A DNA stretch of 61,697 bases, filler included, from Dugesia japonica (lineage: Eukaryota): NCBI GenBank assembly GCA_001938525.1. It is 5 parts of 5 records of this genome, joined end to end, with 100 filler letters (N's around TTAATTAATTAA, not from the genome) between each part and the next. Parts side by side here need not be neighbours in the genome. Positions count along the whole stretch, not along the records: positions 23,231 to 34,185 come from MQRL01629706.1; 4 more parts are not named here. One strand, written 5' to 3'. The notes beneath the pieces were generated by a model, which ran no database searches, was not told the origin of the DNA, and saw only the letters and a list, made by a program, of their open reading frames with translations. Positions 23,231-34,100 of this stretch are shown here, one piece after another. A program made the position numbers and the translations under genes. Each line of letters begins with the position of its first letter. Positions within the stretch are counted from its first letter, which is position 1.

Positions 23231-25618
<2,388 letters not shown>

Positions 25619-25779: not shown

Positions 25780-26480
25780 AATTTATGATTTTTTTTTGGA
25801 AAAAGTTCTATGTTTTTTATCATTTTATTCTAAGAAATGTTCTTAACTAATATGTTTTTTATAGAATAAATTGCATGAGTAATATGTTTTTATTAAATAT
25901 TGCATCACTAATGATATTTTTTATTTGAAATTGCATCACTAAAGAGAATTTTTATTTAGAATTGCATCGCTAATGAGAACGTTTATTAAAACTTGCATCG
26001 CTAATGAGAAATTTTTAAAAAATTGCAACACTAATGAAACTTTTTATTAAAAATTGCATCGCTAATGATTTTTTTAATGAGAGTTTTTATTGAAAATTAC
26101 ATGATTAATGTTTTTTATAGAAAAATAATATGACTTATATGTTGTTTATAGAAACTTGTCACTATTAATATGCTTTTTTAAAGAAAATTGTCACTAGTAA
26201 TATGTTTTATTTTTAAAAATTGCATCACTAATGAGATTTCTTCTTAAAAATTGCAACGTTAATATGTCTTTTACGGAAAATTATCACTACATATATGTTT
26301 TTTATAGAAAGAGTGCAATGAGAATTTTATTAAAAATTGCATGACTAATATGTTTTTATGAAAAAAGTTCTGTTTTTTCTAATTTTATGATTTTTTTAGA
26401 AATTGAATGACTAATATGTTTTTTATAGAAAATCATCTAGCTAATACGTTTTTTTTGAAAAAGTTCTATGTTTTTATTAT
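25780..26480. repeat. degenerate tandem repeat, ~30-35 bp unit (AAAATTGCATCACTAATGAGA..TTTTTATT)
   Basis: The motif TTGCA(T/A)C(A/G)CTAAT recurs many times at about 30-35 nt spacing. Confidence 0.85.
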
Positions 26481-26599: not shown

Positions 26600-27830
26600 C
26601 AGATTAATTTTATCGGTGAAATTTAATTAATTGGTATAGAATTTTCTTGTGTATTTAGTTGGGAAAACTTTTAAGGCTTTTACTGGTAATGTGTTGTTTA
26701 ATTTTTCCTGTGTATTTAGTTGGGAATTTATTCGGTGAAGTGGAATGAGGTCAGTTTTTGATTGGTTTAGGTGAATTTGGTCTGAATGTTTCTCGGCGAG
26801 CTCGAATGTGGTCAATTTTTGACTGTTTTTTGATGAAATTGGTCTAATTTATTCTCGAAATTGGTAATTTTTGGGTAAATTGGTTACATTTATCCTCGGA
26901 AATTGTCAATTTGGGCAAACTTGGTCGGTTTTAAGTTATTTTTGAGCGATTTGGTTAGGAATTTACTAGGTGAGGTCAATTTTTTATTGGTTTTAAGTTG
27001 GTTTTTGTTCAAAGTTTCTTGGGTGAGGTTGAATAAGGTAAATTTTTGGTTAGTTCAGGTGAATTTCGTCCCATATTTCCTCGGGATTGCTAGGTTTGGA
27101 TAATTTCTGGGTAATTTGGTTCAATATTTCCTCCGGATTGGTCATTTTGGATAATTTTGAGATGAATTCATTCAATTATGTTCCTCGGATTTGGTTAATT
27201 TCAGTCAGTTTTGGAGGATTTTGGTGAATGTTTCCTCAGGTTTGGTTAGCTTAGATAATGTTTGGGGTGATTTGGTCAATTATTTACTTAGTTTATGTTA
27301 TTTTTGGTTAATTATTTACTCAGTTTAGTCAAAGTTTGGTGATTATCTATTCGGAAATGGTTAGTTTGAGTAATTTTTGTACAATCTTAGTCAGTTAATT
27401 ACTCAGATCGGTCAGTTTTGGATGATTTAGTAAAATATTTTTTCGGGAATGGTTAACTTGGTTAATTTTTGGAAGATTTAGTATTTTATTTACTCGGTTT
27501 AGGTAATATTGGTCAATTATTTACTTGTATGGACAAACTTGGTTAATTATTTGTTCACAAGGGTTAGGTGAATTCGGTCAATTATTTACTTGATAATGGT
27601 TAAGTTTGTTAATTTCTGAGTGATTCGGTCAGTTATTTACTCACAGCGGTCAGATTTTGGTTGACAGTACTCAGAGGTTTGTTGACAGTGCTCAGAATTT
27701 GGTTTTCAGGGCACAGAGATTGGATGGTTATGGTCAATAATTTATTCACAAGTCTAATTTTTCGATGATTTGGGGTAATAATTTTCTTTGTAAGGGTAAT
27801 TTCGTCAATTATTTTATTTAAATTAGTTAA
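26600..27830. repeat. degenerate G/T-skewed satellite (TTTGGTCAAT / TTTCCTCGG motifs)
   Basis: Recurring TTGGT(C/T)AAT and TT(C/A)CTCGG motifs. The same family lies at 59905-60540. Confidence 0.8.
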
Positions 27831-29791
27831 TCTTATATGATAAAAATACAATTCATTCCCGAGTACATTACAAAATAGTTGACCTTAATTAATAAATTGT
27901 TAATAAATTTATGTTTTAGAAAAAGTTTAATGTTGATTGAAAATTTCATTAATGAAGTTGATTATAATTAATTAGAACAATTATTGCTTATTTTTAGCAT
28001 ATTCAGCAAGTTTTCAATGATTTTAGTTGAATAATTTTCTCAATGAGATCAAATCGGATCAGTTTTCAGTCAATTACGGCCTATCTTTTAAGGAATTTCC
28101 TAATAATCATCTATTTACTAAAGAATTTCATTGGTCAAATTTAAATTTTTAACAATTAATTAGTCACTCCCATTGATTTTTAACATTTATAGTTATAAGA
28201 TGATAAATAAATTAATTAATAAATTATAAATTATTCTCATACATTGAATTTCATAATAGTTTGTTTCCTTTCCAAATCATTACATAACCTCATCTGGTTA
28301 GTACAGTCGAGCAATTATTCCGACTGTTTACATCCAGTCTCAAATTGTTAACGCTCAAGACCGTTAGTTTCCAATCGAGTATGTTCATATATGAACTTAT
28401 CGATCAGCTTGCATAGTTTTAACAATGCTTAGCTCGATTACGGTATGCACATCTCCGGTAGCAATGATTCCAACCGTTCACGTCCAGTCATGAATGCATA
28501 CTGCTACAATTGTTTAAAAACAATCAGTCATCATCGTCAATAATTGACTAGACACGGATCCGCAAAATGACATAGAATTCCAACTCACTATTATCAATTC
28601 CAATGTATATATAATATTTAATTAAAATATAAATAAGGACAATAATAATAATCGAATAATAATAGTAAATTCATAATAAATTTAAAAAGGAAAAGTTCAT
28701 CAATAATAATCAAATAATAATGATAAATGGTTAATTGTGATAAGAAATGTGCAATAACAATATTAAAGAAAAGTCTAAATCTAATATCGAAATTATAATT
28801 CTAACAGTAATTCATATTCATAAAAAATCTTATTTCAAATTTTCATTAAAAGTCTAATTCTTATTTCAAAATTATAATTCTGAAATTAATTCATATTTCT
28901 AAAATCTTATTTCAAAAAGTAAAATTTCCGTAAATGATAAACTATTTAAATAATTTTCAAAATTAAATATGTCGATTAATTTCAATTTTATTTAGTTAAA
29001 AATAGTACTACAAATAATTATTTGATTAATAATAATTAAAAGAATAAAAATCAAGCATTTTAAATTAAATAACGTAACAATTTAATAATAAATTAAAATA
29101 ATAAAATTAATAAAGTTCTAACAATGATAATAATAATTAATTAAATTATTATTATCATTGTATTAATTAAAATAATAATAAATAAACTTACCTCATCATT
29201 ATGGTTCTTAAATCCATACTCTTCATTTTAAATTTAATTTTCTTTAAAGTTCATAATCTTCATAATTTATTTTTCCTCTCCATCATCATCATTGTTTATT
29301 AATATTATCATAATCTTCATAATTTTCTAAANNNNNNNNNNNNNNNNNNNNNNNNNNNNNNNNNNNNNNNNNNNNNNNNNNNNNNNNNNNNNNNNNNNNN
29401 NNNNNNNNNNNNNNNNNNNNNNNNNNNNNNNNNNNNNNNNNNNNNNNNNNNNNNNNNNNNNNNNNNNNNNNNNNNNNNNNNNNNNNNNNNNNNNNNNNNN
29501 NNNNNNNNNNNNNNNNNNNNNNNNNNNNNNNNNNNNNNNNNNNNNNNNNNNNTTGGTTAAAATTAATTATAAAGAGGAAAATACTTATAATTTACAGTTT
29601 CAAAATTAAATAAGAATTAAATAGGTTTATGTTGATTCTAAATTTTCATTGATTGAATAAAATTTTATTGAAAATTTAATTAATTAATTAATTTCAAAGG
29701 TAAATATTAAGTTCATGAATAATTTATTAGAATTTTAATGAATGAAAGAATAAATGTATATGACAAGATGATGATTAATTGGTGAATTATT

Positions 29792-29990
29792 AGTTGACTA
29801 TATGAAATAAGCGATGAACAGATTAAACCATTAACTAAACATTAGAAATATATTTTTAAAGGAATTTTCTATATTAAGGTGAAAATATGTAAATAATTAA
29901 CCGGTTAATAGTTCTAAAGTATATATTAAGTGCATATTATAAAGTTGACTATATGAAATAAGCGATGAACAGATTAAACCATTAACTAAA
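29792..29990 (+). repeat. 48-bp perfect direct repeat pair
   Basis: AGTTGACTATATGAAATAAGCGATGAACAGATTAAACCATTAACTAAA at ~29792-29839 and ~29943-29990. Confidence 0.9.
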
Positions 29991-30259
29991 TATTCAATAG
30001 GTATATGGTGTTAGTAACGGGTATTGTGTATGTTTAGATATTCTAACCTATAATACTAACAGTTGACACCAATTTTTAACAAGTAATTTCATGAATGTAT
30101 TAGTGGGTCATGAAACTTGTTAGTATTAGAATCAATAATTTTCATGTTTTCCTTTTCATTGAGTAATATAACAATGTTATGTAAGTTGTATTCAAATTGC
30201 ACTATTCTCACATTTGTAATGTGCACAAACTTTGTATGTAATGCAACAAATTATTCATC

Positions 30260-30600
30260 CATCTTGCATACTTCATGTAAATTTCATAAAATTTTTTAAT
30301 ACTTCTATACAATTTCATAAAATATTTTGTTACTTCTATGCAATTTTATAAAATAATTTGTGACTACTTTGCAATTTCATAAACCTTTTGTCGACTACCG
30401 TGTAATTTCATAAAATATTTGCAGACTTCTGTGCAATAATTGAATTATTTCCCTATTCTTTTACATGAGACTTTGAAATATTTATCGACTACTGTGCAAT
30501 TTCAGATTATTTTTATCGACTACTATGCACTTTCATAAAATATTTATCGACTACTATAAAATTTCAGATAATGTATATTGACTACTATAACATTTCAGTT
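30260..30600. repeat. ~30-bp tandem minisatellite (TCGACTACTGTGCAATTTCATAAAATATT)
   Basis: About ten degenerate copies are visible. Confidence 0.85.
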
Positions 30601-32589: not shown

Positions 32590-33680
32590 TTGTTCTTGTA
32601 AACTGTTTGTATAGCAAAAGTTTTGCTACAAAGGCAGATATTACACTTTTAGTCTTGATTAAATGTGTCACCTTGTAGTTTCAAATTAGTCTCGTTAAAT
32701 CTGGCAAATAAATCAGTCATATAAGCGATGTAATTTTTTGAGATAATTAAATTATGCCGAAAATTATTGACTTTACTCTCCAGGAATTCCAACACTGAAT
32801 CAAAGAGCGAATAGAAGCGATCCAAACATGCACTTTTAGATAACCAATGTACTTCTGTGTTAAGTAGTTAACGATTATAGTCATCATAATTTTCCAAACA
32901 AAGTTGAACAAATAATCTCTTATTTAAGGCATTTCTTTTGATTTTATTAACTGATCTAATGACATAATGTAGTGATTTATGCAAACGTTCACTAAGGTAT
33001 TTTGCGACCAAATGATGTCGATGAATGACACAATGTACCAATAATACATTCGATATAGCTTGTTTTTATATAAAGAACAATACGTATTAATACGCCGAGA
33101 TATACATAACCATTTTCAGACNAAGAACCCCATNAAATGGGCATCGTAGATCGGATGTCTCAAGGATATCAACTAGCAGGAATCGGAATCTGCTAGCTGA
33201 TTTGGAGTGTCCCTTTGACAATCTAATGATGAAACTCTTCTAAAGCAGAGAATTTGAAAGGTCCTATCGAAAACACTATGAACAACCGAGACATCAAATA
33301 CGAAGTGGTGGACTTCCTTTTGCCATGGAAATGCGTAAGGTTATCACTAACCAAACCCCAGCCATGCTCACATTATAAGTACTAACGAGGCCTAGTGCTG
33401 CTTAACTTCCGAGATCCGGTGTACCCAACCTAGTATGAGGGTCAATGAATGCCAGAAAGCCTCGGTTTCGTTTTACCATTGCTGGAGCACCATCAGAAGC
33501 AACAGAGATGATATTAATCAAGGGTATAACTTTTACATCGAAAAATCCTTTTAATTCAGTATTTAACGTTTCACCTTTCGTATCAGTTTCCAAACCTTTA
33601 GCAAATAACAATTCTTGGGAAATTTTTCTTCTTTTACAAATCTCACATAAATTAAAAGTAAAGCTTCGTTTCCTGTATAG
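32590..33680 (-). pseudogene. Buster-type hAT transposase remnant, split by an insertion at ~33069-33443
   Basis: LFAKGLETDTKGE..ASDGAPAMVKRNRGFLAFI stops at 33444 and resumes below 33068 as KQAISNVLLVHCVIHRHHLVAK..LLNTEVHWLSK..IAYMTDLF. Confidence 0.9.
33069..33443 (-). mobile_element. 5S rRNA-derived SINE-like retroposon (SINE3-type)
   Basis: The minus strand begins GACCCTCATACTAGGTTGGGTACACCGGATCTCGGAAGTTAAGCAGCACTAGGCCTCGTTAGTACTTATAATGTGAGCATGGCTGGG, recognisably 5S rRNA with box A and intermediate-element/box C region. About 290 bp of unrelated body follow, and the unit interrupts a transposase frame. Confidence 0.75.
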
Positions 33681-33699
33681 AAAATCCAGATGTTTTTAA

Positions 33700-34100
33700 G
33701 TAATTGGTGGGGTTTTATCTAGGTGAGTAGACAAATCTAGAGTAGTTAGCCTAATAAAACCTCTTGAAGAATTTAATCTGGTGTCCCCAAAAATCCAGAT
33801 CTTCGGAATGGAGCCATTGACTCGGAATCCGAGTACAGACTCGCACTCCTTTGGTTTGGGTTCGTTTTTCATATTACTCGCTTGATTTACAAATCATACT
33901 TATTACTTATCAGTCATAATTTTATTAGACTTCAACTTATAACTCGTTTATTAGATTTCATTTTATTAATTGGTGAAGTCCTAATTAATTAAAATCTTTT
34001 CGTATTGACGGCTAAACATATTTAACTGAGTTTTCTTAATTACTGCTCTTAGGTTAAAAATCAATACCCTATGTTTTTTCAGTTATAAGGAATAGAAGAA
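33700..34100 (-). repeat. unclassified dispersed element, homologous to 14620-14765
   Basis: Shared motifs with the 14.6-14.8 kb segment in opposite orientation. Confidence 0.5.

What the first reader, a model, noticed from the sequence alone, without database searches (positions are those of the whole stretch)
33069..33443. 5S rRNA-headed SINE-like element caught inside a hAT transposase
Seen: a ~375-bp insert breaks the Buster transposase between GFLAFI and KQAIS. Its minus-strand 5' end is 5S rRNA-like (CATAC..TACACCGGATCTCGGAAGTTAAGCAG..GGCCTCGTTAGTACTT..GGCTGGG) and lacks the short stretch that precedes GATCTCGGAAG in 5S. It then passes into an unrelated body containing the hairpin CTAGCAG-GAATCGGAAT-CTGCTAG. 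Known: 5S-derived SINE3 families use the internal Pol III type-1 promoter and are much rarer than tRNA-derived SINEs. Inference: a SINE3 family in a probable flatworm, possibly uncatalogued. The partner LINE is unknown and no clear TSD is visible.
Basis: partly seen in the sequence, partly recalled or inferred. Interest (0 to 1): 0.75.

Follow-up and report, generated by a model that had tools for sequence, protein, structure and literature searches.

The report
5S-headed SINE-like insert in hAT
A 378-base insert that starts with a decayed copy of 5S ribosomal RNA sits inside a dead hAT transposase gene and looks like a single copy of a 5S-derived SINE, a known but uncommon kind of retroposon; whether it belongs to a repeated family could not be tested.

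Summary
Rfam's 5S model matches window 33345-33446 (minus) end to end at 33 bits. That is below the curated cut-off of 38; E is 0.0011 for the piece and 4e-5 for the insert. Eleven model positions (loop C) are missing. The best-kept stretch lies around box A. The insert is 33066-33443 (378 nt). A related hAT fragment from a public assembly (P0006, 79% identical) runs straight across the site, so the insertion is real. The body matches no Rfam family and holds a 12-bp-stem hairpin. There is no T-run after the 5S part. The insert has no terminal inverted repeats, no LTR-type ends, no A-tail and no target-site duplication.

A head at the extreme 5' end followed by an unrelated body fits a retroposed Pol III transcript of a 5S-derived SINE (SINE3 type). 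Family status is untested. No second copy lies in the 10.9-kb piece, and none turned up in any collection I could reach. The host genome is not in those collections, so these blanks say nothing about copy number. The flatworm assignment is unverified. Verdict: a plausible new member of a known kind, of modest interest.

The parts
33066..33443 (-). Whole insert (378 nt): the SINE-like element, read 5'->3' on the minus strand. Bounds are uncertain by up to about 3 nt at each end.
   Evidence: The hAT frame is open on both sides. Relative P0006 is continuous across the site. G+C is 41% against 30-36% in the flanks.
33345..33446 (-). 5S rRNA-like head. The model match runs 3 nt into the hAT codon ATT, so the element itself probably begins at 33443. 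Loop C (11 model positions) is absent and helix IV is shortened. Model positions 45-58 match 14 of 14.
   Evidence: cmscan RF00001: 33 bits, gathering score 38, E 0.0011 and 4.3e-5. The fold gives a three-way junction but is no more stable than shuffles (z = +0.4).
33066..33344 (-). Body and 3' tail, unrelated to 5S. No A-tail and no simple-repeat tail. Two single N at 33122 and 33134 were left as they stand.
   Evidence: No Rfam family, no tRNA, no copy elsewhere in the piece.
33168..33201 (-). Hairpin in the body: 12-nt arms, 92% complementary, 10-nt loop.
33270..33273 (-). The only run of 4 or more T on the element strand, about 174 nt from its 5' end. It could act as an internal Pol III stop signal in this copy.
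32652..33893 (-). Remnant of a hAT (Buster-like) transposase gene that hosts the insert. It is broken by one nested insertion, at least two in-frame stops and at least one apparent frameshift. The C-terminal dimerisation region is not found downstream.
   Evidence: Frames. tblastn of relatives P0002, P0004, P0005, P0006 and of copy 1. Precomputed Pfam PF27073 and PF27046 on relatives.

Best explanation
The insert is one retroposed copy of a small Pol III transcript whose gene was already a degenerate derivative of 5S rRNA fused to an unrelated body. That is a 5S-derived SINE of the SINE3 type.

Inferred mechanism: the internal type-1 promoter in the head (box A, intermediate element, box C) drives transcription from the first base of the element. 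No T-run follows the 5S part, so the polymerase reads on into the body. The 3' part of the RNA, perhaps including the hairpin, is recognised by the reverse transcriptase of a partner LINE and copied into a nicked target. Here the target was inside a dead hAT copy.

Shown: it is a true insertion. It begins within 0-3 nt of 5S position 1. The head is 5S-like but cannot be a working 5S rRNA. The body is not 5S.

Inferred only: Pol III transcription, LINE dependence and the existence of a family.
For: (1) The 5S model matches end to end and is the only Rfam hit in the piece.

(2) The start of the model match coincides within 3 nt with the insertion boundary, which was fixed independently from the hAT frame and from relative P0006. 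This is expected for an RNA-mediated copy that starts at the Pol III start site.

(3) No run of 4 or more T follows the 5S-like 3' end. The first lies about 72 nt further on. A 5S gene with its spacer would not look like this.

(4) Conservation in the head is uneven. Model positions 45-58 match 14/14 and 74-80 match 7/7. Positions 1-32 match 18/32 and 99-120 match 6/22. Loop C is deleted (my count on the alignment). Published 5S SINEs show the same bias towards the promoter (PMC3272025, PMC10886601).

(5) The hAT flanks carry only 1 stop in 221 codons. Neutral change since they lost constraint is therefore at most about 10-13% (95% bound). The head has 6 broken pairs, an 11-nt and a 4-nt loss. 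It was therefore probably already degenerate when it inserted.

(6) No TIRs, no internal direct repeats and no TG..CA ends.

(7) A described 5S SINE copy (HaSE3.1) also lacks a detectable TSD (PMC3272025).
Against: Only one copy is known. None was found in the rest of the piece or in any collection.

The 5S score is below Rfam's gathering score. The box C region beyond model position 80 matches the consensus poorly. A T4 run sits inside the body.

There is no TSD, no A-rich or simple-repeat tail, and no LINE to compare the tail with.

The argument from differential decay is soft, because the host's own 5S sequence is unknown.
Confidence: 0.55

Rival explanations
1. A one-off chimeric retrocopy. 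A LINE reverse transcriptase switched template from some other RNA to 5S rRNA, or to a transcript of a 5S pseudogene. This gave a single 5S-plus-other insertion that never founded a family.
For: Only one copy is known. The head covers the whole 5S model from position 1, as small-RNA parts of such chimeras do. Template switching to 5S rRNA is the proposed origin of composite 5S SINEs (PMC4824008, PMC3272025).
Against: The head is too degenerate for a copy of working 5S rRNA, given how little the surrounding hAT frame has decayed. There is no poly(A) end and no TSD.
Confidence: 0.22
2. A solo LTR or fragment of a non-autonomous LTR retrotransposon that carries a 5S promoter in its LTR (Cassandra / Ajax type, 'TRIMp3'), or another transposon that captured a 5S fragment.
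For: Such elements exist in animals, for example Ajax in nemerteans at 421-434 bp (PMC10886601). The size of the insert is compatible with an LTR.
Against: There are no TG..CA termini with a 4-6-bp duplication in either orientation (my reading of the junctions printed). There is no internal direct repeat and there are no TIRs. The 5S part is at the extreme end and spans the whole 5S, whereas Ajax keeps only the promoter region inside its LTR (PMC10886601).
Confidence: 0.08
3. A dispersed piece of the 5S rDNA array (an orphon): a 5S pseudogene plus its spacer, moved at the DNA level.
For: There is 5S similarity followed by non-5S sequence. There is no TSD.
Against: The insert starts at 5S position 1-4 rather than at an arbitrary point of the repeat unit. 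No terminator T-run follows the 5S part. The head lacks loop C.
Confidence: 0.07
4. Chance resemblance to 5S in an unrelated insertion.
For: The score is below the gathering threshold. The fold is no more stable than shuffled sequence.
Against: E is 0.0011 for the piece and 4.3e-5 for the insert. The match is end to end, with a 14/14 run in the box A region. It begins at the independently defined junction.
Confidence: 0.03

Closest known systems
SINE3: 5S rRNA-derived SINEs. Examples are zebrafish SINE3, HaSE3 and other lepidopteran SINE3 families, SINE3-1_TC of Tribolium, MEG and Ped-1 of mammals, 5S-Sauria, and AfuSINE3 of Aspergillus.
   Same: A 5S-like head at the 5' end, with the best conservation in the promoter part. 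An unrelated body. Length within the SINE range. Inserted into other repeats. One described copy also lacks a TSD (PMC3272025, PMC10886601, PMC10946416, PMC5063351).
   Different: Only one copy is known here. Loop C is deleted from the head. There is no recognisable LINE-type, A-rich or simple-repeat tail. I could not compare its sequence with any catalogued SINE3, because Repbase, Dfam and SINEBase are not on hand.
Ajax / Cassandra (TRIMp3): non-autonomous LTR retrotransposons with a 5S promoter in the LTR.
   Same: A short non-coding mobile element that carries 5S-derived sequence. Ajax occurs in spiralian animals (PMC10886601).
   Different: No paired LTRs, no TG..CA ends and no 4-6-bp TSD. 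Here the 5S part spans the whole 5S and sits at the extreme end.
Chimeric retrogenes made by LINE template switching (small RNA plus mRNA).
   Same: A small-RNA sequence starting at its +1 joined to unrelated sequence.
   Different: Those carry a near-intact small RNA, a poly(A) end and TSDs. None of the three is seen here.

Membership tests
SINE3 (5S-derived SINE) | 5' head homologous to 5S rRNA, starting at or near 5S position 1 | tested here: met
   RF00001 model positions 1-120 at 33345-33446 (minus), E 0.0011 / 4.3e-5, though 33 bits is below the gathering score of 38. The start lies within 3 nt of the insertion boundary.
SINE3 (5S-derived SINE) | Internal type-1 Pol III promoter (box A, IE, box C) kept | tested here: inconclusive
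   Model positions 45-58 match 14/14, 67-72 match 4/6 and 74-80 match 7/7. From position 81 onward the match is poor and shortened (my count). The host 5S is not available for comparison. No expression data.
SINE3 (5S-derived SINE) | Body unrelated to 5S and to the 5S rDNA spacer, with read-through from the head (no terminator after the head) | tested here: inconclusive
   No T-run after the head, and the first T4 is about 72 nt downstream. The body matches no Rfam family. The host's spacer is not available.
SINE3 (5S-derived SINE) | 3' tail shared with a partner LINE, or an A-rich / simple-repeat tail | tested here: inconclusive
   No A-rich or simple-repeat tail. No LINE in the piece and no LINE library, so a LINE-derived tail cannot be judged.
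SINE3 (5S-derived SINE) | Many dispersed copies sharing head, body and 5' start | not testable with these tools
   No second copy in the piece. None in the protein or contig collections. Seven window ORFs are absent from the protein collection, so the host genome is not represented.
SINE3 (5S-derived SINE) | Target-site duplication | tested here: not met
   No shared word of 6 nt or more at the junctions. TSDs are variable or absent for some described copies (PMC3272025), so this is not disqualifying.
SINE3 (5S-derived SINE) | True insertion (an empty site exists) | tested here: met
   Relative P0006 is continuous across the site at the protein level. Its DNA was not retrievable.
Functional 5S rRNA gene | Complete 5S structure scoring above Rfam's threshold, followed by a T-run terminator | tested here: not met
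   33 bits, below 38. Loop C is absent and 6 pairs are broken. No T-run after the 3' end.
TRIMp3 (Cassandra / Ajax) LTR | TG..CA termini, a 4-6-bp TSD, and the 5S promoter internal to an LTR | tested here: not met
   Junction sequences. No internal repeats. The 5S part is at the extreme end.
MITE / non-autonomous DNA transposon | Terminal inverted repeats and a fixed-length TSD | tested here: not met
   No inverted repeat joins the two ends. No TSD.

The most novel reading that the evidence does not exclude
The insert is a member of a still-uncatalogued 5S-derived SINE family in an animal lineage where none has been described. If the host is a flatworm, this would be the first SINE3 of Platyhelminthes. 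Its head has shed loop C of 5S while keeping the box A core. Its body hairpin serves as the handle for a partner LINE's reverse transcriptase.
Probability: 0.3. Interest if true: 0.45.

Novelty: new member of a known kind. Interest (0 to 1): 0.3.

Why it matters
5S-derived SINEs are rare beside tRNA-derived ones. They made up 2.3% of SINEBase's first release and are known from fish, mammals, reptiles, insects and a fungus (PMC10946416, PMC5063351). Each new lineage shows again that the type-1 Pol III promoter can be recruited independently by retroposons, and it gives a marker for that lineage.

A head lacking loop C would also show which parts of 5S such an element can do without.

For annotation, the practical point is that this locus is not a 5S gene and should not be counted as one.

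The gain is incremental. The class and its mechanism are already understood.

Tried and rejected
Searches for further copies all found nothing.
- Word-index protein search with the longest open stretch of the body, 33176-33340 minus.
- Full HMMER search of 1.84 billion representatives with the same stretch. It gave two hits, both translated tandem repeats scoring by summed weak stretches, so not relatives.
- Back-translated pattern scans of metagenome, prokaryote-genome and viral contigs.
- Exact DNA patterns across the loop-C deletion and for the hairpin (one search failed on a busy machine).

An exact look-up of 7 window ORFs showed that the host genome is not in the protein collection. These blanks therefore carry no weight on copy number.

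DNA of the empty-site relative could not be fetched because the sample file is too large. The empty site is shown at the protein level only.

Pfam on the short hAT pieces gave nothing. The family assignment rests on precomputed Pfam domains of relatives and on a marginal Dimer_Tnp_hAT hit on P0003.

Host identification failed. Accessions of the related contigs appear in no held paper.

Rejected on tests: intron, because there are no GT..AG ends and there are stops in frame. Also rejected: MITE, solo LTR and a working 5S gene (see the membership tests).

The bacterial promoter/terminator scan is irrelevant to a eukaryotic Pol III element.

Slip to disclose: while reasoning about the deletion I briefly recalled short stretches of 5S rRNA from memory. 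None of it went into a tool call or a conclusion.

Full report
**What is there**

On the minus strand the piece carries the remnant of a hAT transposase gene. One frame is open from 33695 to 33444, ending ...GFLAFI. The same frame is open again from 33065 (KQAISN...) to 32652, with one stop between. Between the two lie 378 nt, at 33066-33443.

Rfam's covariance-model scan of the whole piece (10,955 bases, both strands, 4227 families) returns a single match with E below 1. It is 5S_rRNA (RF00001) at 33345-33446 on the minus strand, covering model positions 1-120. The score is 33 bits against a gathering score of 38, and E is 0.0011. On the insert alone E is 4.3e-5.

The alignment lacks model positions 33-43 (the tip of helix III with loop C). 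It has 10 nt where the model has 14 at the tip of helix IV, and it marks 6 non-standard pairs.
- the 5S likeness;
- the missing short stretch;
- the break in the transposase;
- the hairpin, which is in fact longer, with 12-nt arms at 33168-33179 and 33190-33201, 92% complementary, and a 10-nt loop;
- the absence of a target-site duplication.

**It is a true insertion**

A word-index protein search with the upstream hAT piece found one relative, P0006. It is 74 aa, 79% identical, and comes from ENA assembly ERZ27256860. Its precomputed Pfam domain is PF27073, FAM200-ZBED5 RNase-like.

Its residues 1-56 align to 33611-33444. The next residues, KQAIPN, correspond to the window's KQAISN at 33065 onward. 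The relative runs through the site with nothing lost or gained. This places the insert at 33066-33443, give or take about 3 nt.

The second, more distant hAT copy in the piece (23562-25391, plus strand) also reads gaplessly across the homologous site. The DNA of P0006's contig could not be retrieved, so the junction is fixed at the codon level only.

The insert has 41% G+C, against 30-36% in the hAT flanks and about 25% over much of the piece.

**Anatomy of the insert**

The 5S-like head begins within 0-3 nt of the insertion boundary. The model match extends 3 nt into the hAT codon ATT.

Counting identities to the Rfam consensus in the alignment gives:

| Model positions | Match |
|---|---|
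| 1-32 | 18/32 |
| 33-43 | absent |
| 45-58 | 14/14 |
| 67-72 | 4/6 |
| 74-80 | 7/7 |
| 81-98 | poor and shortened |
| 99-120 | 6/22 |

By established knowledge of the type-1 Pol III promoter, box A lies at about +50-64, the intermediate element at +67-72 and box C at +80-97. Box A is therefore intact, the intermediate element is partly kept, and box C is uncertain.

Folded alone, the head gives a three-way junction but is no more stable than shuffled sequence (z = +0.4). It cannot be a working 5S rRNA.

No run of T follows the 5S-like 3' end. The only T4 on this strand lies about 174 nt from the 5' end.

The remaining 279 nt match no Rfam family and no tRNA. They fold somewhat better than shuffles (z = -1.7), mostly because of the hairpin.

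The ends share no inverted repeat, and there is no internal direct repeat. Neither orientation offers TG..CA ends with a 4-6-bp duplication (junctions). The 3' end is neither A-rich nor a simple repeat. The insert is not an intron, since it lacks GT..AG ends and has stops in the hAT frame.

**Best explanation**

The architecture consists of a small-RNA head starting at its own +1, loss of the terminator, an unrelated body, and insertion into another repeat. This is the architecture of a SINE, here of the 5S-derived SINE3 type.

The uneven conservation of the head, best around the promoter, is what the literature reports for HaSE3, other lepidopteran SINE3 families and Ajax (PMC3272025, PMC10886601).

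A further, softer argument comes from decay. The flanking hAT frame has only 1 stop in 221 codons. From the stop-mutability of those codons, this bounds neutral change since loss of constraint at about 10-13% (95%), with a point estimate of a few percent. The head carries two deletions and at least 6 broken pairs. It was therefore probably already degenerate when it inserted. The source would then have been a 5S-derived element or pseudogene, not the ribosomal 5S RNA.

Pol III transcription, dependence on a LINE and any role for the hairpin are inferred, not shown.

**What could not be shown**

The defining property of a SINE is a dispersed family. I found no second copy in the piece. The following searches also found none:
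- the word-index protein search with the body's longest open stretch;
- a full HMMER search of 1.84 billion representatives, whose two hits are translated tandem repeats and spurious;
- pattern scans of metagenome, prokaryote-genome and viral contigs.

None of seven window ORFs is in the protein collection. The collections hold no eukaryote genome DNA that can be searched by nucleotide sequence. These blanks therefore say nothing about copy number. No LINE is present in the piece to compare tails. Repbase, Dfam and SINEBase are not available.

**Rivals**

- A one-off chimeric retrocopy from template switching remains the main rival, at about 0.2. It explains the single copy. It fits poorly with the degenerate head and with the lack of poly(A) and TSD.
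- A solo LTR of a Cassandra/Ajax-like element, a DNA-level 5S orphon and chance similarity each fail specific tests. These are the termini and TSD, the start at 5S +1 together with the missing terminator, and the E-value together with the coincidence with the junction.

**Host**

The flatworm guess is untested. The hAT copy at 23562-25391 is 86% identical in DNA to a Logan contig of run ERR13948508. It is 74% identical to a contig from a termite-gut metagenome. The source of P0001 and P0006 is ENA ERZ27256860. None of these names the organism, and no held paper cites the accessions. hAT elements also move between lineages, so they are weak taxonomic evidence.

**Comparison with what is known, and novelty**

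5S-derived SINEs are established in fish, mammals, reptiles, insects and a fungus (PMC10946416, PMC3272025, PMC5063351, PMC10886601). In the held library I found no report for flatworms. This is an absence in one library, not proof.

If a family is confirmed, this is a new member of a known kind. The mechanism would be ordinary. The loss of loop C from the head would be a minor point of interest.

The hAT pieces were searched apart, and the insert was not cut out. The two N in the tail were left as they are.

For the broken hAT gene I give counts only: one nested insertion, at least two in-frame stops, at least one apparent frameshift, and loss of the C-terminal region.

While reasoning I briefly recalled short stretches of 5S rRNA from memory.

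Noticed in passing
window 23562-25391 (+): A second, diverged hAT/Buster-like transposase remnant, interrupted by assembly gap 24194-24295. It has a hAT dimerisation-type C-terminal motif in ORF 25188-25391. It is 86% identical in DNA to Logan contig L001 (ERR13948508) and 74% identical to a termite-gut metagenome contig (L003).
   Followed up: partly
window 25846-26365 and 30268-30588: Two arrays of 31-bp tandem repeats (about 17 and about 10 units, 65-81% matches). Similarity between the two arrays is weak and partly inverted. They might be subterminal repeats of a larger element or a satellite.
   Followed up: partly
window 26700-27850: G/T-rich degenerate repeats of 41-51 bp with a strong strand asymmetry (GC skew about +0.4, AT skew about -0.3).
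   Followed up: no
window 28731-29730: An extremely A+T-rich stretch (G+C 9-15%) around assembly gap 29332-29552.
   Followed up: no
window 29792-29843 and 29943-29994: A 52-nt direct repeat, 98% identical, 151 nt apart.
   Followed up: no
P0006 (ENA ERZ27256860) against window 32995-33027: Just downstream of the insertion site, the empty-site relative of the hAT continues in a different frame from the window's copy. Both are decayed copies of one hAT family.
   Followed up: partly
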